Part shown: positions 16,201 through 34,837 of the stretch, in pieces
How the letters are laid out: each line of letters opens with the position of its first letter
Numbering within the stretch: position 1 is the stretch's first letter
IMG/VR virus record: IMGVR_UViG_3300043409_000928
Span: 124,001-188,000 of that record
Length of the DNA: 64,000 nucleotides
Direction: 5' to 3' (one strand)
Position numbers and translations under genes: made by a program
Notes under the pieces: generated by a model
Seen by the model: only the letters and a program-made list of their open reading frames with translations
What the model was told of the DNA's origin: nothing
The model's database searches: none

Positions 16201-19200
16201 GAAGAATTACTACTGGGAACCAATTACAGTTCAACTGATGCAGTCACTGGCATGGCATTTACTACCAACGGAATGCTACCAACGGAATATAATGTTACTG
16301 TGTTGCAGTCACGCTTTGCACTGGCATCACTGCTAGAGACTGGTATAAATGGAAACGACCATGTATATTTTTACTTGAATGGCCAACTATTAAAGAACAG
16401 AGTTGATTACACATTTGATACTGTATCAAATGAAGTAGTTTTAAAACTGCCTGCATCCGTTGGAAGCACAGTTACAATATTTCAGGCCAATGAAGCAGAT
16501 GTGTTTACCGCTATTCCAGCAAGCCCTGCCAAGTTAGGTCTTTCTGGAGTATACGAGCCTAAGATTGTTGTTGAAGCATGGGGAGATGAAACTAGAACAT
16601 TAATACAAAGACACGATGGTTCTAGGATAACAGCATATACACCGCCAGATGAATCAACAGTTGAAAATTATATTCTTAATAAGATTATTCTTGAATTTGA
16701 AACACGGGTATTCAATGGTATTATAAAAACAGTAGGCGACATTGGCGTACAACTTCAAGTCAACAATTTTAACAATAAAGATCCGTTAGAAGCACTGGCA
16801 AGGGCACAACTTGAATGGTATTCTACTAACAGTATTAATTTTAGAGATCGTTCAGATTTTAAACTGACAGATCCATGGACATGGAACTATAGTGGATACA
16901 GTTGGAGAGGCATGTACATTAACTATTTTGGAACATACAATCTAAATACAGCACCGTGGGAATCGCTAGGTTATAGTATTATGCCAGCATGGTGGGATAG
17001 TCATTATTCGTGGACTGACGCAGGCAAGCGAGCTAGCTTAGAATTTGCATTGCAAAATGGTATTACAAGCAGTCCTGCAGATGCATTAACAATTAACCCT
17101 GCGTTTGTTCGCAATGTTGATTCTTTCCCAGTTGGCACAGATGGAAAGTTATTGGATCCAGTAATCTGGGGAATTGATGCACCAACAGCAGACGAAGCCG
17201 AACAGCCTTGGGAAATTGGTTCTTGGGGAACTGCTGAAACAGCATGGAGAAGAAGCATTGCCGGAGCATGGGCCGGTGTGCTATATGCTGTCAATGACTA
17301 CGCATACCTGAGCGAGTTTTTTGACAGCTCAGTTGATCCGTTCTCTATGCAATTGCAATTTGATAATGATAGTGTTAAACCTAAAAGCTTTAATTCTATG
17401 AGTCCAAGTCAATTCTTTCAAGACCGCCCAACAGTTGGCATAGGTGCAGTGATATTTGAAGCTTATAGAGAATTTAATTTAATTGGCGAAACTCCACTAA
17501 TTGATCTGATGTCAATTAACATTCGTGTCGGATTTGGCATAGGTGGATTTAGCGACAATGATTTCACATTAAAAATGCCATTTGCTAAATTTCAAATTGG
17601 TAGTTATGTACCGGACGAAGATGTATTAATGACTCTAAGCGAAGGCGTAGCATTGCCAGCATTACGATACACTGCGGTTCGCATTGAAAAAGACAATGAA
17701 GGTTTCAGAGTCTATGGATTTGATCCAGGCCAACGCTACTTTACTATTTTTCAGCCATCTACTCGTAGTAGCACTGGCAATTTTCCAAGTACACGACAAC
17801 AACTGGTAACAAGCTATGGTACTTTTATAGAATACTTAGAATGGGACCAAGCTGGGACTGTGGTACCGTATGGACAGCTTGTTTCAAACAAACAGGACCT
17901 GTTGACATTCTTACTGGGCCTAGGGGAATTTCAAGCCAGCAAGGGACTGATGCTGGATCAAATTAACGATCGAGGAACAGTTACCACATGGAAGCAGGCT
18001 GCAATTGACGCATTTGCATGGATTGAAGAAAATTGGGGTGACCGTCACTACTGTGTGGTTGGTGTTGCAACCAATGATGGTTTAAAGTTTTATCACGAAA
18101 GAGGTATGCTAGACAGGCTTGACAGTGAAGTAGGACAAAGCGGTAAAATTTTATTCAACTCGGGCAGATCGGCTCTTGCAAATGAAATTCTAATCACACG
18201 CGAGTATGAGCCTAATGTGGATAAAATTTCTCCGGCAAGCGATGAACAAATTGTGTTTGCTGATATTAGATTGCGCGAATATGAACATGTAGTTTATATC
18301 AATAGAAGAACTAAGTTCAGCGATACCATTGTTGACTTCTTAACAGGAGCAAGACTTGATAGTTTAAAATTCTCTGGTCGTAGGTCATACGCTTGGACAG
18401 GCCGCCCCAACGCCCGAGGCCTAATTCCAAATGAAACCGGAATTGTGCCCAGTTTTGATGCAATAGTATCTGACATCATTGAAAGTCATAAACCTGAATC
18501 AAGCGCATTTGATGGGTTCAAGAGTCGTGTGTCGCGAGCAAACTCAGTGCCGTCTAAGGACACAGTTGTATTTGATATTATACAAGATCCCAATGCGGCA
18601 TTTTTATATAGACAAGGTTTACAAACAGCATCTGGTACCAACTTGGCAATTGATGCATTATTTAGAAATGTAAATTTTGATATTCCAGGTCGTCTACAAG
18701 ATGTAAGTGTTAACGAACAGTGGATGTTTGATACAGGCAACTATGGTCGCCTTGGTGAACAAAAAATTTGGGAAATTGAATTACGCAAAGAAGATTTTAC
18801 TGGCAATAGACAAATTATTCGATTTAAAGAAGTTAATACAGCAGTAGACTTGCAAGGCGACAATATTATTGATATCATTGGCGTAAATGATCCGCGCTGG
18901 GTTACACGGCCAACCAACTCGGTTGACTTCAGAACCATCTCTCGTAATAACATAACGCTCGAGTATAGCAAACAAAACGGATGGTTACCAAGTGCTGGTA
19001 TTGCCGAGTTAACAGATACCAATATACAAATAGTCACTTTAGATGACCTAAACTATAGTGATTTGCTAGGACTAACAGACATTGCAAATAATGTAACCAA
19101 TACATTAACTACAGGTAAACTATTTGCAATCAGGTCATTCAGCAAATACGGTGATTATGAAGTTGGCGACTATACATGGTATACTGGTATTTTATATCAA

Positions 19201-21909: not shown

Positions 21910-21915
21910 TAAATA
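21910..21915 (+). promoter_or_regulatory. Late promoter motif TAAATA, 5 nt before ATG 21921
   Basis: cTAAATAtgcttATG. Confidence 0.65.
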
Positions 21916-21920
21916 TGCTT

Positions 21921-22547
21921 ATGAACAAGATTCAATTACCAGTCAGTATCGAAACATTTATTGTCATCAAAGATGCCGATACCGGAGAAATATTGCGTGA
22001 AGGCTCCAATGCCATTCACCAGGAAAACATGAGCACCGCCATTGCAACGGGACTGTCCCGTGGTAATAATCACTTTATCAGTGAAATACACTTTGGCATT
22101 GGTGCAAGTATTACAGGCATTGACGGAGTAATTACATACCGCAAGCCCAATGTAACTGGCATTGACGCCAACTTACACAAAGCAACATATTTTAGGGTAG
22201 TCGACGACGAAGACCTAAACAATCCAGACGCAGAAGCAAACAATGTGACTGTGACACATACAACAGGCACAACCTATGCAGATACTATTGTGACCGCAAC
22301 AATTGATTATAGTGATCCGTTGGTAAACGACAGCACATATAACATTGTTAACGGTACACAACAAAGCTTAGATGCCACAACCAGTGTTGACGGTGAGGTT
22401 GTGTTTGATGAAATTGGATTAAAAACCAAAGGGACAACTGGGGTCAATACAGGTAATTTGCTCACGCATTTTATATTCCACCCAGTTGAAAAGCAAATTA
22501 ATCAGCGTATACAAATTATATACACACTGAGAGTGCAGACCGGTTAA
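21921..22547 (+). CDS. Putative virion structural protein
   Basis: Structural operon context; FDEIGL...LLTHFIFHPVEK..N..I.I.YTLR C-terminus; start reassigned to 21921. Confidence 0.55.
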   Translation: MNKIQLPVSIETFIVIKDADTGEILREGSNAIHQENMSTAIATGLSRGNNHFISEIHFGIGASITGIDGVITYRKPNVTGIDANLHKATYFRVVDDEDLNNPDAEANNVTVTHTTGTTYADTIVTATIDYSDPLVNDSTYNIVNGTQQSLDATTSVDGEVVFDEIGLKTKGTTGVNTGNLLTHFIFHPVEKQINQRIQIIYTLRVQTG

Positions 22548-22560
22548 AACGGGTATCCGC

Positions 22561-22566
22561 TAAATA
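22561..22566 (+). promoter_or_regulatory. Late promoter motif TAAATA upstream of fibre gene
   Basis: Intergenic TAAATA followed by a 33-nt leader. Confidence 0.5.
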
Positions 22567-22599
22567 TACAAAGGCAATAAGCCAAAAGGACATGAGAAA

Positions 22600-23667
22600 A
22601 TGGCATACGAAGTAAACAAAAGCAACGGTGATATATTAGTTAACTTGATTGATGGTGAAGTTGACAATACTACTACGCCCTTAAATTTACTAGGTAAAAA
22701 CTACCTGGGATATGGCGAACTAATCGCTGAAAACTTTGTTCACATGCTTGAAAATTTTTCAAGCAGTTCAGAGCCTGTGAGCCCTATTACCGGTCAGCTA
22801 TGGTTCAACACCGGTGAGAACAGATTGGCAGTACAAGATACTGATGAACATTGGAAAACGCTGGCCCATTTGGTGAGTCGTCAGAATAGACCAACTGATA
22901 CTGCTCGCTTAGGCGACTTTTGGTGGGATACAACAAACAAAGCATTGAAGATTTATGTTGGAACAACAAGTGCAGATCAAGTACTTCCGGGCTACAATTC
23001 TGGTTGGGTAAATGCCAGTGCGTTCCAAGGCAACAGCGGTATCAGCTTTGCAGACTTACTAGATACAAACGGAACCACACACAGGGTAGTTCGTTTTAAT
23101 GTAAATGGAATCTGCGTTGTAATTCTTAGCACTGATGCAGAGTTCACAATTGCACAGTCACATGCTGTTAATGGATTTCTTAGAATTGGTAAAGGTATTA
23201 ACATGAATACCACAGGCAACGACACACAGGCATTTAATCCAAATGCGTTTAAGTTGCGCGGTATTAGTATGGAAGCTGAATTTGCTGACGTGGCTGAAAT
23301 TTATGTTGGCGATGCTACATATGAGCCAGGTACATTGGTAAGCTTGGGTGGAGTAGCAGAAGTAACACAAACAGTTGGTGTAGCAGATCAAAATATCTTT
23401 GGTATTGTTTCTACTAGACCAGCTTACTTGATGAATGCACGACAAAAGCACGAAATAAATGCAATGCCAATTGCTGTTGCAGGACGAATCCCAGTCAAGG
23501 TCACTGGCATCGTAAACAAAGGCGACAGATTAGTTGCAAGCGATATCCCTGGAGTAGCACAATCTGCCACAGTTGATGTTCCAGCCTGGAGCATTATTGG
23601 TCGTAGCTTACAAAATTTCAGCGGAGAAGGCGTCGGTAAAGTCGAAGCTACAGTTGGAGTTAGGTAA
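22600..23667 (+). CDS. Tail fibre/baseplate appendage protein with C-terminal chaperone-like domain
   Basis: N-terminal LLGKNYLGYGE..AENF..MLENF; C-terminal ADVAEIY...YEPGTLV...GRIPVKV.G...GD.LV. Confidence 0.6.
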   Translation: MAYEVNKSNGDILVNLIDGEVDNTTTPLNLLGKNYLGYGELIAENFVHMLENFSSSSEPVSPITGQLWFNTGENRLAVQDTDEHWKTLAHLVSRQNRPTDTARLGDFWWDTTNKALKIYVGTTSADQVLPGYNSGWVNASAFQGNSGISFADLLDTNGTTHRVVRFNVNGICVVILSTDAEFTIAQSHAVNGFLRIGKGINMNTTGNDTQAFNPNAFKLRGISMEAEFADVAEIYVGDATYEPGTLVSLGGVAEVTQTVGVADQNIFGIVSTRPAYLMNARQKHEINAMPIAVAGRIPVKVTGIVNKGDRLVASDIPGVAQSATVDVPAWSIIGRSLQNFSGEGVGKVEATVGVR

Positions 23668-23672
23668 GCACA

Positions 23673-26600
23673 ATGTCTACCAAACGCTATATTGTTGCTG
23701 TCAATAAAGATGTAGTCGATCTGAATCTATTTTGGAATCAGGTTGAGTCTGCCACTGCTGGCATTGCAAACATTCCTGACCGCCCAGTTGCAATAGCAAA
23801 CAATCGAAGTGCGTTTACACGAATTTGCGAATATGAGTTAACTGAAGCTGAAGCTGAACAGTTACGCAATGATCCTAGGGTGTATTCGGTTGGGCGACCT
23901 TATGAAGATTTACCTTGGATTACAATAGCACCAAACTCTATTACTCAATCTGATAATTTTACAAAACCGGCCAATGGTAACAGTAGTAACAGCTTTGTAA
24001 ATTGGGGAATGCCTCGACACAGTAGTACTAGCAATGTTTATGCAACTAATTCAAATCCACCATACATTTATGATCTAGATGGAACTGGTGTTGATGTTAT
24101 TATTTCAGACTCTGGCATACAAGCAGACCATCCTGAATTTACAGATGCTAATGGCAACACCAGAGTCTACAATCCAAATTGGGATAACATTGCTAGTCAA
24201 ATTGGTGCATCTGCTACAAGTGGATGGGATACAGCAAGTTATATCTATGGTAACACATCAAGTGTTGCAGGCCACGGTACCCATGTAGCTGGTACAGTAG
24301 CAGGAAAAACATACGGTTGGGCAAAGAATTCAAGAATACTATCATTAAGATCAACTGGGGAATTACCAGGTGACATAGCTGATGTATTTTCTATGATAAA
24401 ACATTGGCATCAAAATAAGGGCAGTAATAGACCAACCGTAGTTAATATGAGCTGGGGTACATCAATTAGTGCTAATGATCTGGGACTAACAGATCCAAGT
24501 CAAACTTCGTTGGTAAAACAGATCATTGATTCTGTAACATATCGAGGTACCACATATACTACAAATGGTTCAATTGAATCAGATAACTTCTATCAGTCTA
24601 AGGGGCTACTAGTAGGTTCTGACAATTTTGCATGGGCATCTTTGCTTAATGGTTTACCAATCCATGATACAACATATGACACTTTTATTAGTGAAATGCT
24701 AAGTGCTGGAATAGTCCTGACACATTCAGCTGGTAATAGTAGCTATAAAATTGATATACCCACTGGGCTAGATTATAATAATAATTTTTTAATAAACATT
24801 GATGCTATTTTTCCAGGATATGGAACACTTACAGTTTATTATAATCGAGGTAGCAATCCATCAGTTCCTATTACTGTAGGTAGCTTAGATAGTGTTACAT
24901 CTGGATTAACTGATCAAGCCGCAACATATTCAATGAAAGGCCCAGGCGTCGATATATGGGCCGCTGGTACTAATATTATGAGTGCCTGGGCAAACAATGA
25001 TGGTAGTAGCGTAGCGTATTTTAAAAATTCTAGCTTTAAACAAAAAAACAATACAGGTACTAGTATGGCTAGTCCTAATATTGCTGGTATAGCCGCATTG
25101 TACCTGCAACAAAATCCAACAGCAACACCTGCACAAGTTAAAGCGGCTTTATTGGCTAACGCCACCAACACAATTTTAAACACTGGAACCACAACTGATT
25201 ATACCAATGGCAGATCATTGCTAGGCAGTAGTCCTAAGGTTGCCTATATTAATACAGTAACAACTACACCACCACCAACAACCTACACATTAACTGTAAT
25301 CAAGACTGGCTCTGGCGACGGAACAATAACAAGTTTACCAGCAGGTATTACAGGTCCAGGTACAGCAACATTTGCCGCAGGCACAGTTGTTACCTTAACC
25401 GGAGCACCACAAGCAAATAGTTCTTTTGCTGGGTGGTCTGGAGCCGCAACAGGTACTGCTCCTGCAAGCATTGCAATGAATGCTAACAAAACAGTTACAG
25501 CAACATTCAATGCAATCAATGTTCCTTCTTATACAATTACAACAGCACCTACGCAACTCAGTGAAGGCGCTACAGCACCATTTGTTGTTACAACAACCAA
25601 TGTTCCAAACAATGCAACATTGTATTGGAGAATTGTCAACGGTGCCAGCAACTTTACGCAAGCAAGTGGTTCATTTACTATCGCTTCCAACAGCGGAACA
25701 TTTACAGTAACGCCTAATACAAATACCATAGTTGATGGCAATAGAACATTCGTTGTTGAAATTAAAACAGTTTCAACCAACGGGGTAACAGTTGCTACCA
25801 GCAATCCCGTTACCATTGTGGATATGAACTCATACCCAGTGGCCGGAACAGAACTATCAACATTCTGCAGAGACTATGATCAATGGGCAATGATTGCAGA
25901 TGGCGCAGGTGGGCAAACTGAACAACTTAAACAAGCAGACAGCACAAACTGCGGATATGATCCAACATGGCCAGCCAAGGACTCTATCATAAGTGAAGGC
26001 TGTGTCCCAGGTACATATACCTATAGAGTTACTCGAGCAAACGGATACAATGGAACATACAACGAAAACGAAATCAACAGTATCCGTTGTGGTTACCAGG
26101 CAACTGGCACACCAATGGGCGAACCTTATTGCCTGGGTCTTGATCGATACCAGGACTATGCAGACGGTTATGGTGGAAGATACAACCTGGTAATTGAAAG
26201 GAATAGCACACTATGCGGATATGTACCACGAATAAGACCAGCCGAAACAAAACCACAACCAGAAAAGAAGATAACAGAGCACTGGTACAATACACTAACA
26301 ACAGAAGTGAATGAGTTGTTTGGGGATATACATGCTGGCAAAGGACCTAGTGCGGATGTGACTGTGCAAGAAAGTGCAATCAAATGGGGCTGGGGCGGAG
26401 AGAATGTTGCCCAAGTTGGAGTCTCTGAAAAGATAACAGCGGTTCATACCAATAAACTTGTAAATCGTGTTAACTTGAGTACATTAAGAACTGGCAGTAG
26501 TGATCAAGAATTGGTCATTGTTTCTAAAGGTGGCAGGCTAACTGATGAGTTTTTCAAAACTGTAACAGATTTACTAGATACTGCCAGGGAAATAAAGAAC

Positions 26601-27389
26601 ACTGTTGAACCAAGTATGACCGAATTAAGCGTACTTGGATCATACAACAGCACTGAAAATTGGACCAACATTTTACAAACAGAAGTTCAATTGGACTTTG
26701 GCACTTACGAAGATGCTCGACATTTCTTTAACGCAGGCGGTGATATCAGACTTAGTTTTAGCACACAAGATGGTTACGGTCCAGGTTACCATAATTGGCG
26801 CTGTATCTTTTTTGATCAAGGAACATTAAAATTAAATGTTGATAGTCTACTCAGCTTGAACTCCCGTGGTATTACACAGGATAAAGGCTTTGCCCAGATC
26901 ATTGAAGAAGAACAATTGCTATACACTAGTCCTAGTGCCAGCGGTGGTAGTGGAGGCTATGGAGGCTATGGAGGCTATGGCGGCTATGGAGGCTATGGAG
27001 GCTATGGCGGATATGGAGGCTATGGAGGCTATGATAATTGCCACACTGGCGGATATGGAGGCTATGGAGGCTATGGAGGCTATGGAGGCTATGGAGGCTA
27101 CGGCCACCAGCATCATGACCACAGCGGATATGGCGGCTATGGCGGATATGGCGGATATGGAGGCTACGGTGGTTACGCATCCAGCCGCTTAAAAGTATAT
27201 GGTTCAATTGTCAACGATAAACTAATTTTAAGAGTAATCCTTGATAATTCTGGACTTGGAGTAAGAATTCGAGGCATAATGAAAATGGCAGTTTCTGTGA
27301 CTCATCCTTCAACTGTGACCGAAAACAATGTCACATTAACATTGCCAGTTCCTACTATAGAACTGACACAAGGCTGGACTGAAATCTAA
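23673..27389 (+). CDS. Subtilisin (S8) serine protease fused to Ig-like/repeat domains and a virion-type C-terminal domain
   Basis: Triad DVIISDSGI, GHGTHVAG, GTSMASP; oxyanion SAGN; InlB-B-like repeat YTLTVIKTGSGDGTI...FAGWSGA. Confidence 0.88.
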   Translation: MSTKRYIVAVNKDVVDLNLFWNQVESATAGIANIPDRPVAIANNRSAFTRICEYELTEAEAEQLRNDPRVYSVGRPYEDLPWITIAPNSITQSDNFTKPANGNSSNSFVNWGMPRHSSTSNVYATNSNPPYIYDLDGTGVDVIISDSGIQADHPEFTDANGNTRVYNPNWDNIASQIGASATSGWDTASYIYGNTSSVAGHGTHVAGTVAGKTYGWAKNSRILSLRSTGELPGDIADVFSMIKHWHQNKGSNRPTVVNMSWGTSISANDLGLTDPSQTSLVKQIIDSVTYRGTTYTTNGSIESDNFYQSKGLLVGSDNFAWASLLNGLPIHDTTYDTFISEMLSAGIVLTHSAGNSSYKIDIPTGLDYNNNFLINIDAIFPGYGTLTVYYNRGSNPSVPITVGSLDSVTSGLTDQAATYSMKGPGVDIWAAGTNIMSAWANNDGSSVAYFKNSSFKQKNNTGTSMASPNIAGIAALYLQQNPTATPAQVKAALLANATNTILNTGTTTDYTNGRSLLGSSPKVAYINTVTTTPPPTTYTLTVIKTGSGDGTITSLPAGITGPGTATFAAGTVVTLTGAPQANSSFAGWSGAATGTAPASIAMNANKTVTATFNAINVPSYTITTAPTQLSEGATAPFVVTTTNVPNNATLYWRIVNGASNFTQASGSFTIASNSGTFTVTPNTNTIVDGNRTFVVEIKTVSTNGVTVATSNPVTIVDMNSYPVAGTELSTFCRDYDQWAMIADGAGGQTEQLKQADSTNCGYDPTWPAKDSIISEGCVPGTYTYRVTRANGYNGTYNENEINSIRCGYQATGTPMGEPYCLGLDRYQDYADGYGGRYNLVIERNSTLCGYVPRIRPAETKPQPEKKITEHWYNTLTTEVNELFGDIHAGKGPSADVTVQESAIKWGWGGENVAQVGVSEKITAVHTNKLVNRVNLSTLRTGSSDQELVIVSKGGRLTDEFFKTVTDLLDTAREIKNTVEPSMTELSVLGSYNSTENWTNILQTEVQLDFGTYEDARHFFNAGGDIRLSFSTQDGYGPGYHNWRCIFFDQGTLKLNVDSLLSLNSRGITQDKGFAQIIEEEQLLYTSPSASGGSGGYGGYGGYGGYGGYGGYGGYGGYGGYDNCHTGGYGGYGGYGGYGGYGGYGHQHHDHSGYGGYGGYGGYGGYGGYASSRLKVYGSIVNDKLILRVILDNSGLGVRIRGIMKMAVSVTHPSTVTENNVTLTLPVPTIELTQGWTEI
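25833..26222 (+). repeat. Three 42-46 aa Cys-containing protein repeats ending in CGY
   Basis: C...A(D/N)G.(G/N)G.......S..CGY three times. Confidence 0.8.
26952..27176 (+). repeat. 9-bp tandem repeat (GGAGGCTAT and variants) encoding GGY x20 in blocks of 9, 6 and 5
   Basis: Directly visible; spacers DNCHT and GHQHHDHSGY. Confidence 0.97.
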
Positions 27390-27416
27390 TTGGACATTCC
27401 ACATTATATACGCTGA

Positions 27417-27422
27417 TAAATA
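27417..27422 (+). promoter_or_regulatory. Late promoter motif TAAATA heading the glycosyltransferase operon
   Basis: gaTAAATAac in the 27390-27447 gap. Confidence 0.55.
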
Positions 27423-27447
27423 ACAACGTATATAATATTGGAATTAA

Positions 27448-27792
27448 ATGGACAGTAAAATCACAGATGCACTTGCATTTGCCAATTATAGATTAACCCT
27501 ACAAGTACAGCGCCAAAATATTGAAGCGCGAGTCCAAACGGCCCTATTGTTGTCTTATCAAAGTGCAATTTTTAAAACTACACAAGAACTAATTTCTTTT
27601 GTTGATACAAAATTGCGACTTGGTGGCAACCTTTTTGTTCAAGACCAAACCAATAATGTAATTTCCATTCTTAATCCAGCTGAATTTTTAAGCTGTTTAA
27701 TTACAACATATGATTCAGCAATGGAAATGAAGCAAACCGAGCAACATAAATTAAAGTCAGCAAGAAGCACAGCTAAAATTGTAGGACTCTAA
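27448..27792 (+). CDS. Hypothetical protein, possibly fibre assembly chaperone
   Basis: Follows the fibre/protease genes; helical. Confidence 0.4.
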   Translation: MDSKITDALAFANYRLTLQVQRQNIEARVQTALLLSYQSAIFKTTQELISFVDTKLRLGGNLFVQDQTNNVISILNPAEFLSCLITTYDSAMEMKQTEQHKLKSARSTAKIVGL

Positions 27793-27793
27793 A

Positions 27794-28672
27794 ATGAGTA
27801 CCAAAGGCTTTATGATGTTTGCTTACAATAACGAACAATTGGATTACACCCAACTGGCGTTAGTAGCGGCATACGCTGTAAAAAAACACATGCCAGACTA
27901 TCCAGTTGTGCTAGTCACGAATCAAGCCAGTCTGGAACATTGTAAAAATACACATGGCCCTGCAATAATGAATGCCGCATGGGATGATATCATATTAACT
28001 GATCCAGGCTATGAAAAGAATATGCGACTGCACCACGATGGCGCATATTATAGCTTTAATGCACAGTTTACAAATACAAACAAGCATGACATTTATAATC
28101 TAAGTCCGTTTGACGAAACTATTTTAATTGACACAGACTACTTGTGCGGCAATGCCAACTTGTCAATGCTGTTTGACAGCCAATATGATGTTGCCATGTA
28201 TAGAGATGCTCGCAATCTTCGTTATGAAGAACCCTACACAACTGAACGATGGTTACACTATGCAGGTATTCGCATGTGGTGGAGTACTGTGGTATATTGG
28301 CGCAAGAGCGAAGAAGCCAAACACTTCTTTAATATTTGGGCCGAAGTTAAAAAGAACTGGGAATATTATCGCTTCTTGTATAAGTTTCCTGGTACATTAT
28401 ATCGCACAGACTATTCAGCCAGCATTGCCGCGCACATGTGTGATGGTTGGCAAGATGGTGGCTTCATTGGCCAAATTCCTAACTTCATGCGTTACCAAGA
28501 TCAGCGCGATGATATAGTTGAAGTAAAGGGTCCTAATAGTTGGGTAATGTTAAGCAATTTACCCGACGAATGGAAGAACATGGTAGTTGAAATAGCCGGG
28601 GAAGATGTACACTTGATGAATAAAAAAAGCATACTTCGCAACTATGATCAAATTATGGAACTGTTGGCATGA
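27794..28672 (+). CDS. GT-A fold nucleotide-diphospho-sugar transferase
   Basis: SPFDETILIDTDY DxD motif; N-terminal GFMMFAYN. Confidence 0.7.
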   Translation: MSTKGFMMFAYNNEQLDYTQLALVAAYAVKKHMPDYPVVLVTNQASLEHCKNTHGPAIMNAAWDDIILTDPGYEKNMRLHHDGAYYSFNAQFTNTNKHDIYNLSPFDETILIDTDYLCGNANLSMLFDSQYDVAMYRDARNLRYEEPYTTERWLHYAGIRMWWSTVVYWRKSEEAKHFFNIWAEVKKNWEYYRFLYKFPGTLYRTDYSASIAAHMCDGWQDGGFIGQIPNFMRYQDQRDDIVEVKGPNSWVMLSNLPDEWKNMVVEIAGEDVHLMNKKSILRNYDQIMELLA

Positions 28673-29373: not shown

Positions 29374-30346
29374 TGAAATTCAGTTTGTATTACGGACTAG
29401 GAAAAAAACTCAAGCAGAAATCTGGTCCGTAGGGTTTGACTCTAATACTGGTAATATCTTAGAAATTGTACCGGGTAATGCCAGTAAAGAAAGGGCAACA
29501 ATACAAGTTTCGTACGCTTCTGTTAAAGCAATACTTGCTGGCACAAAAAATCAAAACGACTATCGCGTAGTTTTTAATGAATCAATCGGGGCATTAGATC
29601 TGGTAGATATAAAACTGCCTACAAAAATTAAAAGAAAACACATTAACACCGGTTGGCTAAGCAACGGGGAGTATCAAGGCGAGTTAGATAGTGATATAAG
29701 AACTATACTTTTCAACGACTCGGGGATGATACGAGTTGAAGCCACAAGACAGTGGTCTACACACATTAAAGAACGCATGGAAACAAATTCACTAGAAGAA
29801 ACAATTCCGTTTTTTATCACTGACATTGAAGATCCTCATCAGCTATTTGGTAAAGGCGACATACGCCTAATAGATATAGTTGAGCGTGGATTCTGGGAAA
29901 GCCGGCTATGGGCATTTATGGATCATGATGTAGTACAAAAAATATTATACCACGGACAAAAAGTTAGGATTAATTTGCCGCCAATTGCAAAATCATTATT
30001 CTTTACAAGGCTTGGAGAATATTCACAGTTTAGTGGAGTAGTCGATGATCAGACTGTAATGAGTCATATTGGCCCAGGCAAGCACATTTCTATATTTGTC
30101 AAGGATGGCATATTATGGGCACAAAGTCATTATCAGCCCGGATCACCAATTGACAATCTGACAGGAAATTTAAAATTAGCAGTATTAAAATCAAACGACA
30201 CCGAATCCTTTGTACAATGGACACAGTTACCAGCCCTACTGCTAAGACAACATGCACCATTTGAAATTTCAAGTAAATGGCCATACAAAGGACACCCATA
30301 CATGTTATATAAAGCAAACAACCTAGATATTGGAGTACTAAATTGA
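29366..30346 (+). CDS. Hypothetical protein
   Basis: 326-aa coupled ORF. Confidence 0.5.
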   Translation: MTDEIQFVLRTRKKTQAEIWSVGFDSNTGNILEIVPGNASKERATIQVSYASVKAILAGTKNQNDYRVVFNESIGALDLVDIKLPTKIKRKHINTGWLSNGEYQGELDSDIRTILFNDSGMIRVEATRQWSTHIKERMETNSLEETIPFFITDIEDPHQLFGKGDIRLIDIVERGFWESRLWAFMDHDVVQKILYHGQKVRINLPPIAKSLFFTRLGEYSQFSGVVDDQTVMSHIGPGKHISIFVKDGILWAQSHYQPGSPIDNLTGNLKLAVLKSNDTESFVQWTQLPALLLRQHAPFEISSKWPYKGHPYMLYKANNLDIGVLN

Positions 30347-31314
30347 AAACCCCTATTACAGAATTTGATGTAGTATTCATCAGCTATGATGAACCAAATG
30401 CTGATGAGAACTATGCAGACCTATTAGAAAAATGCCCTTGGGCCAAGCGCAGTCATGGTGTGTATGGTAGCGATGCTTGCCATAAGGCAGCGGCCAAGCT
30501 GGCAGAAACAGAACGCTTTATCACAATTGATGCAGATAACAAAGTGCGAGCAGACTTCTTTGAAATGGAACTGGATTTGACCAAGTTTGATCGCAGTGAT
30601 GTACTAAGCTGGTCAGGCAAGAACGTGGTCAATGGTTTAGTTTATGGCAATGGCGGTGTTAAGCTGTGGCCCAAGAAAGTTGTTGAACAGATGCGTACAC
30701 ACGAAGCAGTTGATTCAGGCGCTGGCGCTGTGGATTTTTGTTGGGATATACATTACCATCAGTTAAACAACATCTATTCAGATGTGTACAACAATGCAAC
30801 ACCATATCAAGCATATCGTGCAGGTTTTAGAGAAGGTGTTAAACTAGCATTACATGATGGTCGTCCAATGGACTGGCGTCAAATTGCAGATAGAAATAAT
30901 TTTAAAAATCATCGTAGACTACTGGTCTGGATGAGTGTTGGCGACGATATTGACAACGGTTTGTGGGCCATGTATGGTGCCCGCTTGGGTTGTTATCTAA
31001 CCAACTTGCGAAAAGATTGGGACTACAGGCTAGTAGCCGATTTTGAATGGCACAATGCATACTGGCAAGAAGATGTTATGCCGCAGTTTGCTGGTGACGA
31101 AATTGTATGTCCAAAGTCAAAATATGCTTGGAGTAAAACAAAATTAATGGCCGAAACAATTAAGTTGGGTAAAGCATTGCATCAAGACCTGCGCCTAGAC
31201 ATTGCCACGTTAGATGCCGCTGGCAGTAAATTCTTCAAGGCAAGTTATTTCAATCCTCATCGCCTTGGCCCAACTGTCAAGGAAAGCGATGTTGAACAAT
31301 TTATTGCGGAGTAA
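30343..31314 (+). CDS. GT-A/GT2-like glycosyltransferase, paralogue 1
   Basis: DVVFISYDEPNAD...HKAAA...ITIDADN; YGNGG; GFREG. Confidence 0.65.
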   Translation: MKTPITEFDVVFISYDEPNADENYADLLEKCPWAKRSHGVYGSDACHKAAAKLAETERFITIDADNKVRADFFEMELDLTKFDRSDVLSWSGKNVVNGLVYGNGGVKLWPKKVVEQMRTHEAVDSGAGAVDFCWDIHYHQLNNIYSDVYNNATPYQAYRAGFREGVKLALHDGRPMDWRQIADRNNFKNHRRLLVWMSVGDDIDNGLWAMYGARLGCYLTNLRKDWDYRLVADFEWHNAYWQEDVMPQFAGDEIVCPKSKYAWSKTKLMAETIKLGKALHQDLRLDIATLDAAGSKFFKASYFNPHRLGPTVKESDVEQFIAE

Positions 31315-31317
31315 AGT

Positions 31318-32190
31318 TTGTTAGACGTTTTCTTTATCAGTATTGGCGAACAAGAGGCAGAAGAAAACTTTGCACGACTGCAAGAATTTGTTCCAAATGC
31401 CAAGCGTATAACAAATGTCACAGGCATTTATAATGTGCATAAGGCATGTGCTGAATTAAGTGCCACAGAAAACTTTTGGGTAGTTGATGCTGATGCATGG
31501 ATTGTGGACGGATTCGACTTTGATTGGGAACCTGATATATCTGTAATACACTGGGGTGTACCTGAAACTGAATGTGTGGCTATTTGGCCAAGTGTCAATC
31601 CAGTTAATTATTTACAGTATGGATACGGTGCAGTAAAAGTGTTCCCACGCAAACCCTTTATTGAAAACAGGCCATGGCATATTGATATGACTTCGTCCAT
31701 TGCAAATATTATTATCAATAAAGGAATTGTCAGTTGCGAAACACGATTCAACGCAACTCCTGAAAGTGCCTGGATTGGGGCATTTAGAGAATGTGCAAAA
31801 CTTGCTTCACTTTCAATGATCAAGACTCGTGTCAACAAAGCAAAAGCCGCTGAAAAGGCCGAATTGGAAGAGGTAGTAAGGTACTCTGTTGAACAAGACT
31901 GGGATTACGACAAGAAACACAACTATCGCAGAAGCAGGGCCTTGCTGGTTAAAGACAGGTATAAAAGAGAAAAGGATATCTTCACCTATTGGGATGAAAT
32001 GGTCACGGGCGGCCAAAATAAACTAGTATGGTGTACCAAAGGATGGGATAATAAAAACGGCAAGTATGCAATACTTGGCGCACAGGCAGGATCTAAATTT
32101 GGACTGATCAACAGTGACAATTTAGAAGTGCTTGATTTGATCAATGATTGGAATTGGTTAAGAAAGGAATTTAAAAATGTCAATGTTTAA
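31318..32190 (+). CDS. GT-A/GT2-like glycosyltransferase, paralogue 2
   Basis: DVFFISIGE...HKACA...WVVDADA; YGYGAVK; AFRECAKL; TTG start. Confidence 0.65.
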   Translation: MLDVFFISIGEQEAEENFARLQEFVPNAKRITNVTGIYNVHKACAELSATENFWVVDADAWIVDGFDFDWEPDISVIHWGVPETECVAIWPSVNPVNYLQYGYGAVKVFPRKPFIENRPWHIDMTSSIANIIINKGIVSCETRFNATPESAWIGAFRECAKLASLSMIKTRVNKAKAAEKAELEEVVRYSVEQDWDYDKKHNYRRSRALLVKDRYKREKDIFTYWDEMVTGGQNKLVWCTKGWDNKNGKYAILGAQAGSKFGLINSDNLEVLDLINDWNWLRKEFKNVNV

Positions 32191-33157
32191 TATTAAAACG
32201 ACAACTGGTGATTCATCAATTGCTAATTCATCAATAGTCAATATTCCGGTAGTGTTTCTTAGCTTTGATGAGCCAAATGCCGACCTGCATTGGGAAAATT
32301 TACAGTCAATTGTACCACACAAGAAAATTGCCAGGGTACATGGGGTAGTGGGATTTGATACTGCACACAAAGCCGCCGCCGCAGAGTTTCCAACAAGCAA
32401 ATACATCATCACAGTTGACGCAGATAATATTGTTGATCCTAAATTTTTTAAATTGACTATTCCTGGAAAGGCAGATGGCCAAGTCAGTTACACCTGGGGC
32501 GGCAGACAATATACAAATGGCCTAATGTACGGAAACGGTGGTTTAAAAATGTGGAGCACAGAACATCTTGCCAACATGAAAAGCCATGAGCTGGCAGATG
32601 ACCAACGTGATGCTGTAGATTTTTGTTGGGACTTTGAACGCTACAAAGACTTACCAGGTTGCTATTCTAATGTATACACAAATGCCAGTGCTTACCAAGC
32701 ATTCCGTGTGGGCTTCCGCGAAGGTGTAAAGCTGTCAATGGAACAAGGTCGTGTGCTGGCATTTGACGAATGGATAACTACAATGCATGCCGCAAACTAC
32801 CAACGATTAATAACTTGGATGACAGTGGGTGCTGATGTTGAGCATGGCATGTGGAGTGTGTACGGAGCACGACTTGCAGTGAAATTTTTGCAATATGATG
32901 ATTTTGACTTTGTAAACATACGCGACTACGCATGGTTCAATGAGTTCTTCAAACAACATGGGACAGTTGATCCAGTTAAAGGTAGTAAAGTACTGGGCAA
33001 ACAAATTAGTGAGGGTCTGGGTTGGATACTACCTGATTTTGATAGTGAACAAAGTTCGTTTATTAAACAAATACAATTGCATCCAGCCAAAGCACTCACA
33101 CACGAAGATGTTGTATGGCGTACCAATTTAAGTTTATATGGATGGTTCCGTGGATAG
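32177..33157 (+). CDS. GT-A/GT2-like glycosyltransferase, paralogue 3
   Basis: VVFLSFDEPNAD...HKAAA...ITVDADN; YGNGG; GFREG. Confidence 0.65.
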   Translation: MSMFNIKTTTGDSSIANSSIVNIPVVFLSFDEPNADLHWENLQSIVPHKKIARVHGVVGFDTAHKAAAAEFPTSKYIITVDADNIVDPKFFKLTIPGKADGQVSYTWGGRQYTNGLMYGNGGLKMWSTEHLANMKSHELADDQRDAVDFCWDFERYKDLPGCYSNVYTNASAYQAFRVGFREGVKLSMEQGRVLAFDEWITTMHAANYQRLITWMTVGADVEHGMWSVYGARLAVKFLQYDDFDFVNIRDYAWFNEFFKQHGTVDPVKGSKVLGKQISEGLGWILPDFDSEQSSFIKQIQLHPAKALTHEDVVWRTNLSLYGWFRG

Positions 33158-34319
33158 AAATACAGAATTGAGAAATGCCCTGCTGTTCTTTACAGATGAA
33201 GCATTGGGGTTTCGTAAAAGCCTGCACCATTTACACAGATGGTTTGAGTCTGGAGAGCAACACGATCTAGAATTACTAATAGCCGAAGTGGGGATAGAAC
33301 ATCATATTAATTTTTGGCCACTGATACACTATGCAAACGGCCAGTCAGAATTAAACGATCAAGATGTAAAGACATTATTTTTAAAGAATTTACATGTGCC
33401 ATTGGAATGGAATCCAGACGGTTGTATACTTTCACCGTTTACTCCTTTTGCATTTTCAAGCCCATCATTACCTATCATTGACAGAGTTGACAATTTTTGG
33501 AAAATTAAACAGTGGATCGAAGATAATCCACACTTTGAAAACCCCATGACAATGGTAGCTCACTGCCTGCAAACGATACAAGAGTCCAGACAAGACTTTA
33601 CAAAATTAGTTGACATTCTTAACATGTTACTTGGTCCAACAATTGTTTCTTGTGTTAAAAATAACGACATTAACTTTTTAAGTGAGATGGTTGCAAACTA
33701 CTATTCCAATGCACCAGCATTTGTTAAAAATCTAGGAGCAGTTGTCAATGACACTCCGGATTTAAATTGGACAGATGCACTCAGCAGGAATCAAATACAA
33801 AGTAAAGTATGGCTCTTGGAAAAATTAAAAGAATCGGGCGTATTATCTAAATCTCGACCAGTAACAGAGAAACCTGCAACAACTATCATTGTTGGCGGAT
33901 GGGTGGGCATGTTACCCATGCTGGCGGCCATGCATAAGATACACTTAGGCGATGTTATCAATGTTGATTCTGATAAATCTGTGCATAGTGCTTCTATGAA
34001 CTTGAATATAGCACATAACAAATCTTATAAAAGTGTTGATAAGGATATCAAACAGTATCCATTTAACAAGCACAAGGAACTGTTGGTCATCGACACTATA
34101 GTTGAACATTTTGAAAATCACGGCGAATGGATTAAAACATTGCCCAAAGGAACCACCGTGGTGCTACAGGGCAATGATATGTTTAATCTACCTGATCATG
34201 TAAACTGCCATCGATCGTTAGAAGAGTTTTTATCCGACTGTGGCTTAAATACTATTCTATGGGCCGGCGAACTTAATTTATATAAGTGCAACAGGTTCAT
34301 GGCAATAGGAAAAGTTTAA
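33138..34319 (+). CDS. Class I SAM-dependent methyltransferase-like protein with unknown N-terminal domain
   Basis: DALSRNQIQSKVWL; IIVGGWVG motif I; VINVDSD; IDTIVEH. Confidence 0.6.
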   Translation: MDGSVDRNTELRNALLFFTDEALGFRKSLHHLHRWFESGEQHDLELLIAEVGIEHHINFWPLIHYANGQSELNDQDVKTLFLKNLHVPLEWNPDGCILSPFTPFAFSSPSLPIIDRVDNFWKIKQWIEDNPHFENPMTMVAHCLQTIQESRQDFTKLVDILNMLLGPTIVSCVKNNDINFLSEMVANYYSNAPAFVKNLGAVVNDTPDLNWTDALSRNQIQSKVWLLEKLKESGVLSKSRPVTEKPATTIIVGGWVGMLPMLAAMHKIHLGDVINVDSDKSVHSASMNLNIAHNKSYKSVDKDIKQYPFNKHKELLVIDTIVEHFENHGEWIKTLPKGTTVVLQGNDMFNLPDHVNCHRSLEEFLSDCGLNTILWAGELNLYKCNRFMAIGKV

Positions 34320-34837
34320 TGTCAGCTGACTCAAGGTTTAAAAAGTACAACTTTCAAATTGATTTAGAGCGTTTAAAAGAAGAAACTGAACGGCTTCTTT
34401 TTGATTCTTCTACGGGCAAATATCGTACACAAATGTCCCTGCAAACAAACGGAACAACTGATTGGGATTCTAGCACAGGTACAAGAGAAGGTGATGATGA
34501 AGCACAGTGGGATCAAATACATCCTGAATTGGCAGGCACCTGGTGGGATGATTTCTTAAAAGGATTTCCATTTAAACTGTATCGCGCTCGACTAATGACA
34601 ATGCATCCACGTACCTGTTATAGTATACATACTGATATGAATCCCAGGATACACATTGCCATCAAAACCCATCGGCAGGCCCGTTTTATCTTTACAGCAC
34701 CACCGTCAAACACACACCTTCCAGCCGACGGGAGTGTATGGTGGATCGATACCACAAAAGAACATTCAGCAATGAACGGTAGCATGGAAGATCGCATTCA
34801 TTTAGTTGCTTGCTTGGTAAACACAGCAGAAGAATAA
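34319..34837 (+). CDS. Asp/Asn beta-hydroxylase family 2OG-Fe(II) dioxygenase
   Basis: RARLM..HP...YSIHTD...RIHIAI...EHSAMN...RIHLV; start at TAATG overlap. Confidence 0.8.
   Translation: MSADSRFKKYNFQIDLERLKEETERLLFDSSTGKYRTQMSLQTNGTTDWDSSTGTREGDDEAQWDQIHPELAGTWWDDFLKGFPFKLYRARLMTMHPRTCYSIHTDMNPRIHIAIKTHRQARFIFTAPPSNTHLPADGSVWWIDTTKEHSAMNGSMEDRIHLVACLVNTAEE

What the first reader, a model, noticed from the sequence alone, without database searches (positions are those of the whole stretch)
26952..27176. (GGY)20 tract with His/Cys spacers inserted in a virion-type domain
Seen: a 9-bp unit repeated 9+6+5 times, separated by DNCHT and GHQHHDHSGY, with synonymous variation (GGA/GGC/GGT, TAT/TAC) that suggests selection on the peptide and not only recent slippage. 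It sits inside an otherwise ordinary domain of the last structural gene before the tailoring cluster. Established: Gly/Tyr-rich repeats act as adhesives, crosslinkers (DOPA, dityrosine) or self-assembling stickers, and His clusters bind metals. Inference: the roughly 21 Tyr may be the substrate of the adjacent enzymes, giving a phage adhesion element; copy number may vary.
Basis: partly seen in the sequence, partly recalled or inferred. Interest (0 to 1): 0.65.

Follow-up and report, generated by a model that had tools for sequence, protein, structure and literature searches.

The report
Expandable Gly-Tyr loop, phage tail protein
A run of twenty Gly-Gly-Tyr units in a tail-region gene of an uncultured lake jumbo phage is real, and it is the longest known version of a selected, length-variable Gly/Tyr loop shared by a whole undescribed family of phage proteins; what the loop does is still unknown.

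Summary
Window 26952-27176 encodes (GGY)9-DNCHT-(GGY)6-GHQHHDHSGY-(GGY)5 inside ORF 23673-27389 (1238 aa). That protein has an S8 protease, Ig-like domains, Cys repeats and a 373-aa C-terminal domain.

The tract is not a one-off insertion. The C-terminal domain belongs to a phage-only family with no Pfam, PHROG or PDB match (751 representatives). A confident model shows a helical part plus a beta-sandwich. The tract is an unmodelled loop between two sandwich strands.

In 77 related loci this same loop is 42% Gly and 23% Tyr. Its length runs from 6 to 83 residues and its Tyr count from 0 to 22; the window's loop is the longest.

The peptide is under purifying selection. Two pairs of relatives keep identical 51- and 57-residue loops despite 18-20% synonymous DNA differences.

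Copy number changes fast. A relative with 85-94% DNA identity has 5 units, and a lake strain lacks the DNCHT spacer.

Weakly GT8-like and GT2-like genes follow the gene in nearly every locus, whatever the Tyr count. Coupling of the long tract to these enzymes is therefore unsupported, though Tyr modification is not excluded.

Best reading: a slippage-tunable, Tyr-presenting contact loop on a tail-module protein. This is a new variant of a known kind.

The parts
23673..27389 (+). Gene for the 1238-aa multidomain protein (P0001) that carries the tract
   Evidence: ORF list and translation. It is syntenic with homologues in L002 and 80 IMG/VR loci.
24081..25178 (+). Subtilisin-like S8 protease domain (aa 137-502)
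   Evidence: Pfam PF00082, E 7e-28. The motifs DSG, HGTH and GTSMASP are visible in the translation. An unrelated N-terminal module replaces it in L002, L025 and L015.
25296..25517 (+). Ig-like 'divergent InlB B-repeat' domain (aa 542-615), followed by a second Ig-like stretch
   Evidence: Pfam PF18998, E 9.5e-8.
25848..26267 (+). Three Cys-bounded repeats of about 45 residues, each ending in CGY
   Evidence: Read directly from the translation. Also present in relatives.
26268..27386 (+). Conserved C-terminal domain (aa 866-1238) of an unnamed phage-only family: a helical part plus a beta-sandwich
   Evidence: Profile search: 751 representatives at E<1e-3. No Pfam, PHROG or PDB sequence match. 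AF2 model: pLDDT 85.7, pTM 0.82. Only generic beta-sandwich matches, best Z 6.0. Structural matches in BFVD and the Atlas are phage proteins only.
26952..27032 (+). Block 1, (GGY)9
27033..27047 (+). Spacer DNCHT. It is one example of a recurrent single-Cys spacer near the middle of long tracts.
   Evidence: Analogues: EDCN, NCSP, ADCG, HCDS and CGY in L010, L015, L019, L018 and L013. Absent from the strain in run X2.
27048..27101 (+). Block 2, (GGY)6
   Evidence: Logan unitigs of the probable source run break here.
27102..27131 (+). His-rich spacer GHQHHDHSGY
   Evidence: Among 77 loci only the window has more than 1 His in the loop. The spacer is kept in run X2, with a synonymous change and one extra His.
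27132..27176 (+). Block 3, (GGY)5. Its last Tyr is nearly invariant in the family, at the point where the chain re-enters the sandwich.
   Evidence: (Y303 of the domain is at least 90% conserved).
27396..27444 (+). Conserved intergenic hairpin between this gene and the next
   Evidence: -15.4 kcal/mol, z -4.7. 89 of 91 bases are identical in L002.
21915..23667 (+). Two conserved upstream neighbours (210 aa and 355 aa). The second has tail-fibre-like PHROG matches.
   Evidence: PHROGs. Found at -1.7 and -1.0 kb in nearly all loci.
27448..27792 (+). Conserved 114-aa downstream neighbour, function unknown
   Evidence: Present directly downstream in nearly all loci. No family match.
27794..28672 (+). 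292-aa GT-A/GT8-like (glycogenin-like) candidate glycosyltransferase; a weak assignment
   Evidence: Atlas feature score 0.95 to GT8 clusters. A profile search of the PDB hits only glycogenin-1, at E 0.5, with the invariant DxD aligned. No Pfam hit. Present in 68 of 69 loci.
30343..33157 (+). Three tandem paralogues (323, 290 and 326 aa) of a GT-A/GT2-like candidate with an invariant DAD motif; a weak assignment
   Evidence: Atlas cluster name and a 0.87 score to PF00535. 2 of 29 members reach PF00535 at E 0.037. Present in 63 of 63 loci.
34286..34837 (+).
   Evidence: Pfam PF05118, E 2.5e-8. Found only in the closer relatives, including ones with short tracts.

Best explanation
The tract is the most expanded known form of a family-wide Gly/Tyr loop. 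The loop leaves and re-enters the beta-sandwich of a conserved roughly 320-residue domain. That domain is encoded at a fixed place in the baseplate/tail block of a clade of aquatic jumbo myophages.

Shown:
- where the loop sits in the fold;
- its Gly/Tyr composition across the family;
- its extreme length variation, in steps of 9 bp that keep the frame;
- strong purifying selection on the peptide.

Inferred:
- Replication slippage on the 9-bp unit changes the number of units.
- The loop is exposed and presents a row of about 21 tyrosines per subunit on a glycine backbone.
- It acts as a multivalent, low-specificity contact surface for the host envelope or a polysaccharide, or possibly for a partner protein in the virion.
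- Unit number sets its reach and valency.
- The mid-tract Cys spacer, and in this phage the His cluster, serve as turn, disulfide or metal points.
- The N-terminal protease and Ig-like modules are swappable cargo carried by this conserved domain.
For: Position and family:
- Upstream lie a baseplate hub, gp25- and gp6-like wedge proteins, a giant virion protein and a tail-fibre-like 355-aa protein.
- The order 210 aa, 355 aa, member, 114 aa holds in about 80 loci.
- 70 of 86 members are stand-alone proteins of at most 450 aa. The N-terminal modules differ among the rest.

Fold:
- The AF2 model is confident outside the tract. The tract lies between strands 216-220 and 307-315 and has pLDDT below 50.
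- The sandwich resembles jelly-roll, galectin and phage-fibre sandwiches only generically.

Loop:
- Gly 42%, Tyr 23%, Ser 9%; length 6-83 residues; Tyr 0-22. Distant members show the same bias.
- Repeat types differ between lineages (GGY, GY, SGGY, GSY), so expansions arose more than once.

Selection:
- All 15 unit variants in the window are at third codon positions.
- 323 GGY units in 20 loci use all four Gly codons and both Tyr codons.
- Identical loops persist despite 18-20% nucleotide differences.

Lability:
- 5 versus 20 units between genomes that are 85-94% identical in the flanks.
- The variant in run X2 lacks the DNCHT spacer.

Precedent:
- Gly-rich motifs frame the receptor-contact loops of gp38 adhesins (PMC12032242).
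- An in-frame deletion in the repeats of a collagen-like virophage gene was the candidate determinant of an expanded host range (PMC7242381).
Against: - No experiment or proteome shows that the protein is in the virion, or that the loop faces outward.
- Receptor-contact loops usually vary in sequence. Here, in the close clade, only the length varies and the GGY peptide is kept letter-perfect. That fits a regular structure or an enzyme acceptor motif better than a loose sticker.
- AF2 gives no structure for the tract.
- The trimer test gave no verdict.
- A conserved C-terminal domain with variable N-terminal cargo is the reverse of the usual fibre layout, so the domain may be an anchor rather than a tip.
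Confidence: 0.4

Rival explanations
1. The tyrosines are acceptor sites for a phage-encoded modification, most plausibly O-glycosylation. The syntenic GT8-like (glycogenin-like) enzyme would start it and the GT2-like paralogues would extend it, so the loop would carry a glycan brush.
For: - The GT8-like gene lies 1.0-1.9 kb beyond the end of the member's gene in 68 of 69 loci with enough flank. A GT2-like gene is present in 63 of 63.
- The only PDB matches of the GT8-like profile are glycogenin-1, the enzyme that glucosylates its own tyrosine (from my own knowledge). The invariant DxD motif is aligned.
- Atlas features point to GT8.
- Letter-perfect conservation of GGY fits an acceptor motif.
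- Virion glycosylation by adjacent phage glycosyltransferases is known in mycobacteriophages (Freeman et al. 2023, as cited in PMC12619734).
Against: - The glycosyltransferase assignments are below significance: E 0.5 against the PDB, and no Pfam hit among 26 members.
- All loci come from one phage clade with conserved gene order, so the co-occurrence is not independent evidence.
- The genes persist unchanged where the loop has only 1-2 Tyr (L028, L029, L069, L080, L088). The Tyr count varies 20-fold with the same gene set.
- Such genes could equally act on DNA or on host glycans (PMC12619734).
- A conserved hairpin separates the gene from the cluster.
Confidence: 0.22
2. The tract is an ordered structural element and not a binding surface. 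For example, it could be a hairpin or small sheet of polyglycine-II / 3-1 helices with Tyr on one face, or an elastic spacer. It would set a distance, or lock neighbouring subunits together through Tyr stacking, a disulfide or a metal site.
For: - A period of exactly three residues matches three residues per turn of a polyglycine-II helix (established structural knowledge).
- Strict conservation of GGY and of tract length in two pairs of relatives.
- A single Cys-bearing spacer recurs near the middle of long tracts and splits them into arms of similar length: 9/10, 11/9 and 7/9 units.
- The DNCHT region is the only part of the tract with pLDDT of 50 or more.
- Polyglycine-II sandwiches exist in phage adhesins.
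Against: - AF2 gives low confidence for the tract.
- Uninterrupted tracts of 13-18 units exist without any spacer (L051, L025, L017, L052).
- Distant members have period-2 (GY)n or mixed loops that cannot form the same helix.
- Length varies 5 to 20 units between near-identical phages, which is hard to reconcile with a fixed structural distance.
Confidence: 0.2
3. The tract is functionally neutral low-complexity sequence produced by slippage and merely tolerated in a surface loop.
For: - 11 of 20 units are the identical 9-mer.
- Length differs between close relatives.
- AF2 sees no structure.
Against: - No non-synonymous change in 60 codons, against 15 synonymous ones.
- Identical peptides persist across 18-20% nucleotide divergence, while the flanks change in amino acids.
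- The Gly/Tyr bias is kept across a family that shares only 20-30% identity.
Confidence: 0.04
4. The repeat works at the nucleic-acid level: as a VIPR-type GGY/NN guide array, a G-quadruplex, or Shine-Dalgarno-like pause sites.
For: - The tract holds 13 GGAGG words.
- Phage arrays of GGY/NN motifs have recently been described (bioRxiv 10.64898/2026.04.26.720920, abstract).
Against: - The period is 9, not 5. No GGYNN array occurs anywhere in the window.
- Relatives encode the same peptide with other Gly codons that lack GGAGG.
- The tract lies in frame inside a conserved ORF.
Confidence: 0.01

Closest known systems
Glycine-rich motifs and hypervariable segments of T-even gp38 tail-fibre adhesins (polyglycine-II sandwich; Dunne et al. 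2018, as summarised in PMC12032242)
   Same: It is a Gly-rich repeated element at the end of a myophage tail module, interrupted by short variable segments. It has been proposed both as a structural core and as a recombination hotspot.
   Different: There is no sequence or fold relation. gp38 has five fixed motifs and four 4-residue loops. Here a single loop holds 0-22 Tyr-bearing units and varies in length. AF2 predicts no sandwich.
Collagen-like (G-X-Y)n repeats in phage antireceptors and in the Guarani/Sputnik virophage ORF8
   Same: Tandem 9- or 27-nt in-frame repeats in a virus gene. In the virophage, an in-frame repeat deletion was the candidate genetic determinant of an expanded host range (PMC7242381).
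   Different: There is no proline. Family members with (GY)n, SYS or AY repeats do not keep Gly at every third place. The tract is a loop inside a globular domain, not a fibre shaft.
Eukaryotic Gly/Tyr low-complexity sequences: FUS-type [G/S]Y[G/S] domains, plant class-I glycine-rich proteins, spidroin GGX, tick cement GRPs (from my own knowledge; PMC2901319 was listed)
   Same: The composition is the same and so, in part, is the motif (GGY, SYG, GYG). Tyr acts as a sticker or cross-link site on a flexible glycine backbone.
   Different: They are unrelated in descent. Here the sequence is a bounded loop of a folded phage domain. No evidence exists here for phase separation or dityrosine formation.
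Glycogenin (GT8) tyrosine self-glucosylation, and mycobacteriophage virion glycosylation (Freeman et al. 2023)
   Same: A GT-A enzyme with a DxD motif is encoded beside a Tyr-rich candidate acceptor. In mycobacteriophages, phage glycosyltransferases encoded next to structural genes modify virion proteins.
   Different: Similarity to glycogenin is sub-significant (E 0.5). Mycobacteriophage glycans sit at the C-termini of the capsid and tail-tube subunits (PMC12619734), not in a Tyr-rich internal loop. No modification has been shown here.
Minimalist Tyr/Ser/Gly antibody binding loops (synthetic CDR libraries; from my own knowledge)
   Same: A loop made almost only of Tyr, Gly and Ser on a beta-sandwich scaffold is enough for protein and glycan recognition.
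   Different: The loop is natural, repetitive and far longer. Its sequence is not diversified; only its length is.

Membership tests
Peptidase S8 (subtilase), N-terminal domain of the same protein | Pfam PF00082 match above the curated cut-off | tested here: met
   98.2 bits against a cut-off of 21.8, E 7e-28, residues 137-502.
Peptidase S8 (subtilase), N-terminal domain of the same protein | Asp-His-Ser catalytic motifs | tested here: met
   DSG, HGTH and GTSMASP are present in the translation. Activity was not tested.
Unnamed phage family of the C-terminal domain (defined here by alignments A2/A3) | Full-length profile match and the nearly invariant residues (GWG, N62, N69, W132, Y147, R-x-FFN-x-G, W177, G207) | tested here: met
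   751 representatives at E<1e-3. Conserved columns are listed.
Unnamed phage family of the C-terminal domain (defined here by alignments A2/A3) | Gly/Tyr-rich loop between the 'LLYTS' strand and the 'SSRLK' strand | tested here: met
   Present in nearly all of 77 loci. The window has the longest loop, at 83 residues.
Unnamed phage family of the C-terminal domain (defined here by alignments A2/A3) | Fixed gene order: giant protein, ~210 aa, ~310-355 aa, member, ~114 aa, GT8-like gene | tested here: met
gp38-type polyglycine-II sandwich adhesin | Sequence or fold similarity to S16/T2-type gp38; five Gly-rich motifs alternating with four hypervariable segments | tested here: not met
   No PDB match by sequence, by Foldseek or by VIA-align, where gp38 is not among the rows. 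The layout is one loop, not 5+4.
Collagen-like triple helix | Gly at every third residue throughout, usually with Pro, in a trimeric shaft | tested here: not met
   The window's units do keep Gly at every third place. Relatives with (GY)n, SYSGYS or AYAYVY do not, and there is no Pro. The trimer test gave no verdict.
Glycosyltransferase family 8 (ORF 27794-28672) | Pfam PF01501 match, or a significant match to a solved GT8 | tested here: inconclusive
   No Pfam hit for the window protein or for any of 26 homologues. The profile hits only glycogenin-1, at E 0.5-0.9. Atlas score 0.95 with 167 shared features.
Glycosyltransferase family 8 (ORF 27794-28672) | DxD metal/nucleotide-sugar motif | tested here: met
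   D113 and D115 are invariant in 26 sequences and align with the DAD of glycogenin.
Glycosyltransferase family 2 (ORFs 30343-33157) | Pfam PF00535 match | tested here: inconclusive
   2 of 29 members at E 0.037. Invariant D63-A64-D65. The Atlas evidence is only a cluster name and a 0.87 score. No PDB match.
VIPR guide-RNA array (GGY/NN repeats) | Alternating GGY and NN segments (period 5) outside a coding frame | tested here: not met
   Zero matches to four consecutive GGYNN units in the window. The repeat has period 9 and is coding.
'Moraphage' lineage of aquatic jumbo phages (PMC12619734) | Shared core genes such as lysine-tRNA ligase, PhoH and several glycosyltransferases | tested here: inconclusive
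   PhoH is present. No class-II aaRS domain was found in the 86%-complete record. No marker phylogeny was made.

The most novel reading that the evidence does not exclude
The (GGY)n loop is the acceptor of a phage-encoded, glycogenin-like tyrosine O-glycosylation system. The GT8-like gene would prime and the GT2-like paralogues would extend. Slippage in the tract would then set how many glycan chains each tail protein carries. This would be a length-programmable glycan brush on a virion, and the first tyrosine-linked glycosylation described in a phage.
Probability: 0.15. Interest if true: 0.85.

Novelty: new variant of a known kind. Interest (0 to 1): 0.55.

Why it matters
Repeat-length changes in virion proteins are a known route to altered host range. 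Gly-rich elements are known in phage adhesins.

What is new is a large, entirely uncharacterised family: 751 representatives, no Pfam, PHROG or PDB relative, and so far found only in uncultured aquatic jumbo phages. Its hallmark is a tyrosine-periodic loop that can grow from a few to more than 80 residues. The peptide stays letter-perfect under strong selection.

This gives a clean natural system for asking what a pure Gly/Tyr repeat does on a virus particle. The options are adhesion, ordered polyglycine-type structure, or a carrier of modifications. It also allows a test of whether slippage serves as a tuning knob for phage-host contact.

The invariable neighbourhood of GT-A-like genes turns the modification idea into one concrete mass-spectrometry experiment.

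Tried and rejected
- Nucleotide and protein searches of 50,697 GenBank phage records found nothing. The queries were the whole gene, the C-terminal domain and two distant family members. No cultured phage is known to carry the family at BLAST sensitivity.
- Agrobacterium phage Atu_ph07 has the nearest gp6-like wedge protein (35% identity). It has no family member beside its giant structural protein.
- The first IMG/VR scan with the single protein found nothing. The scan with the alignment found 247 relatives.
- The first AF2 run, with 6 sequences, was unusable (pLDDT 45).
- Foldseek against the PDB gave no match at E<=0.001. VIA-align gave only generic beta-sandwich rows, with Z at most 6.
- Pfam, PHROGs and NCBIfam gave nothing for eight of the ten genes downstream.
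- Complex prediction with three copies of the domain (L002 version) returned 'no answer' (score 0.00). This counts neither for nor against a trimer.
- Copy-number variation inside the source sample could not be read. Only Logan contigs are kept for these runs, and they break within the repeat.
- A VIPR-type array was rejected.
- A role for the GGAGG words or for the (MEA)n alternative frame was rejected, because relatives use other codons.
- The link to the 'moraphage' lineage is unresolved.
- The weak 'cement protein' Pfam hit of the 355-aa neighbour (E 0.008, below the cut-off) was disregarded.
Full report
**Observation**

There are nine, six and five GGY units, separated by DNCHT (27033-27047) and GHQHHDHSGY (27102-27131). 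They lie in frame in ORF 23673-27389 (+, 1238 aa, P0001), at residues 1094-1168.

Tandem Repeats Finder reports the period-9 array. The 285-kb virus record that holds the window has no other Gly/Tyr tract.

The 20 units use five different 9-mers. All 15 departures from GGAGGCTAT are at third codon positions, and none are at the 120 first and second positions. The other ORFs listed over the tract are alternative frames of the repeat.

**The protein and its setting**

The protein has these parts:
- an S8 subtilase domain (residues 137-502, PF00082, E 7e-28) with DSG, HGTH and GTSMASP motifs;
- a divergent InlB B-repeat Ig-like domain (542-615) and a second Ig-like stretch;
- three Cys-bounded repeats (about 726-865);
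- a 373-residue C-terminal domain with no Pfam or PHROG match.

Upstream lie a baseplate hub/spike protein, a gp25-like and a gp6-like wedge protein, a 2868-aa virion protein, a 210-aa protein, and a 355-aa protein with tail-fibre-like PHROG hits.

The gp6-like protein is 29-35% identical to those of Atu_ph07, SCTP-2, XaC1 and the large Escherichia jumbo phages. The genome is therefore a distant jumbo myophage. The runs that hold this DNA are lake and freshwater metagenomes.

**The domain family**

A word-index search with the C-terminal part found five relatives. All of them have a short Gly/Tyr stretch at the same place.

An exhaustive profile search found 751 cluster representatives at E<1e-3. 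Many are stand-alone proteins of 300-350 residues. None has a Pfam, PHROG or PDB sequence match.

With a 63-sequence alignment, AlphaFold2 gives a confident model (mean pLDDT 85.7, pTM 0.82). It has helices in residues 1-117 and a beta-sandwich in 118-373. The tract (domain residues 228-302) is a low-confidence loop between strand 216-220 (LLYTS) and strand 307-315 (RLKVYGSI).

Foldseek finds nothing in the PDB. VIA-align finds only generic sandwiches, with Z at most 6: the CspB jelly roll, galectins and phage-fibre sandwiches. BFVD and the ESM Atlas hold only uncharacterised phage proteins with this fold.

**The loop is a family trait**

Among 62 representatives, and then among 77 loci from IMG/VR and other assemblies, the segment between the two strands is 42% Gly, 23% Tyr and 9% Ser. 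Its length is 6-83 residues (median 34) and it holds 0-22 Tyr (median 9). The window's loop is the longest.

The closer relatives (identity of the best-matching segment 41-59%; the one exception is L051, 33%) carry pure (GGY)n of 5 to 22 units. More distant ones carry (GY)n, SGGY, GSY, EYG or AY repeats, so similar loops expanded more than once.

Long tracts often hold one Cys-bearing spacer near the middle. Examples are DNCHT here, EDCN, NCSP, ADCG, HCDS, or a single CGY. Others run uninterrupted for 13-18 units. The His cluster is peculiar to this phage and its lake strains.

**Selection**

- Across 20 loci, 323 GGY units use all four Gly codons and both Tyr codons.
- L021 and L023 have identical 51-residue loops but differ at 28 of 153 nucleotides.
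- L025 and L022 have identical 57-residue loops but differ at 34 of 171 nucleotides.
- In both pairs, the 150 residues upstream differ at 2 and 7 amino acids.

The peptide is therefore under purifying selection, and in these pairs so is its length.

**Lability**

The closest relative is L002, a 92-kb ENA contig. Its DNA is 94% identical downstream, 88% upstream and 85% in the C-terminal half of the gene. It has only GGYGGYGGHGGYGGYGGY at this place. Its N-terminal protease module is replaced by an unrelated one.

A 2,065-nt contig from another lake study (run X2, 2.7% different) spans the tract. It lacks the 15 nt of the DNCHT spacer, keeps the His cluster with one more His, and has a 9-nt insertion in block 3. 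Twelve of its 14 substitutions in the tract are at third codon positions.

Contigs of the probable source run break inside block 2. The unit number there therefore rests on the original assembly. Variation within that sample could not be read.

**The neighbouring genes**

The order 210 aa, 355 aa, member, 114 aa, 292 aa holds in practically every locus.

The 292-aa protein has no Pfam, PHROG or NCBIfam hit. However:
- its profile hits only glycogenin-1 in the PDB, at E 0.5, with the invariant DxD aligned;
- Atlas features point to GT8.

The 323-aa protein and its two tandem paralogues have an invariant DAD motif and weak GT2 leads.

With profiles, the GT8-like gene is present in 68 of 69 loci with enough flank, and a GT2-like gene in 63 of 63. 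The single exception, L050, shares only the first 218 or so residues of the domain and has no Gly/Tyr loop. That is one case and no more than a hint.

Only the Asp/Arg-hydroxylase-like gene, the fatty-acid desaturase and ThyX reach Pfam thresholds.

The gene set is the same whether the loop has 1-2 Tyr (L028, L029, L069, L080, L088), 5-7 (L002, L024, L026, L020) or about 20. All loci belong to one clade with conserved gene order, so the co-occurrence is not independent evidence of coupling.

A conserved hairpin (27396-27444, z -4.7) separates the gene from the cluster.

**Interpretation**

The descriptive part is well supported. The tract is a selected, slippage-expandable Gly/Tyr loop of a conserved tail-module domain. 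Function is inferred.

I rank first an exposed, multivalent tyrosine contact surface whose reach and valency are set by unit number (0.40). The reasons are the tail-module position, the lectin-like sandwich, the Ig-like and protease cargo typical of host-surface-acting virion proteins, and the precedents of gp38 and of repeat-length host-range change.

The letter-perfect conservation of GGY fits this reading only moderately. It keeps two rivals alive:
- tyrosine modification by the neighbouring GT-A-like enzymes (0.22);
- an ordered polyglycine-II-type hairpin or inter-subunit lock (0.20), suggested by the three-residue period and by the mid-tract Cys spacers that split tracts into arms of similar length.

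Neutral repeat (0.04) and nucleic-acid-level functions (0.01) are disfavoured.

**Novelty**

Gly-rich and repeat-length-variable elements in virus attachment proteins are known. This family, its tyrosine-periodic loop and the scale of its length variation are not described in Pfam, PHROGs, the PDB or the papers searched. I rate it a new variant of a known kind, with interest 0.55.

Noticed in passing
window 23673-25270, compared with L002 10001-11120: An unrelated N-terminal module replaces the S8 protease module in the closest relative, and also in L025 and L015. The DNA on both sides is 85-94% identical. This is a recent swap of enzymatic 'cargo' on a conserved C-terminal domain.
   Followed up: partly
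window 27396-27444: A strong intergenic hairpin (-15.4 kcal/mol, z -4.7, no T-run) lies between the tract-bearing gene and the 114-aa gene. 89 of 91 bases are identical in L002. It may be a transcript boundary or a processing site.
   Followed up: partly
window 25848-26267: Three repeats of about 45 residues, each bounded by Cys and ending in CGY, lie between the Ig-like domains and the conserved domain. Relatives have one to three copies. No family match.
   Followed up: no
window 30343-33157: Three tandem paralogues (34-38% identical) of a GT-A-like gene with an invariant DAD motif. More distant relatives have a single copy.
   Followed up: partly
window 35471-36418 (+) and 38600-39664 (-): Two genes have a PP-loop (SGGxDS) motif typical of ATP pyrophosphatases. 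One has a weak Asn_synthase hit. They flank an unassigned 214-aa gene, a fatty-acid desaturase gene and thyX.
   Followed up: no
L050 9974-11791: This family member shares only the first 218 or so residues of the domain, has no Gly/Tyr loop, and is the only locus without the GT8-like gene downstream. It is a single case.
   Followed up: partly
L003 13053-16058 (same contig as L036): In a distant relative, two radical SAM genes directly follow the conserved block, where the window has extra GT-like paralogues. Atu_ph07 also has a radical SAM gene about 5 kb past its giant structural gene.
   Followed up: no
window 26952-27176: The tract holds 13 GGAGG (Shine-Dalgarno-like) words and an (MEA)n alternative frame (ORF 26866-27192). 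Relatives encode the same peptide with other Gly codons, so neither is conserved.
   Followed up: yes
window 13282-21888: A giant 2868-aa virion protein follows the gp6-like wedge protein. Its counterparts in relatives have 2826-3841 residues (4449 in Atu_ph07), with faint chitin-binding (CBM_5_12) hits.
   Followed up: no
window 3567-4214: A cytidylyltransferase-like gene (PF01467) sits just upstream of the baseplate block. It may be relevant to nucleotide-sugar or polyol activation if the GT-like genes do modify the virion.
   Followed up: no
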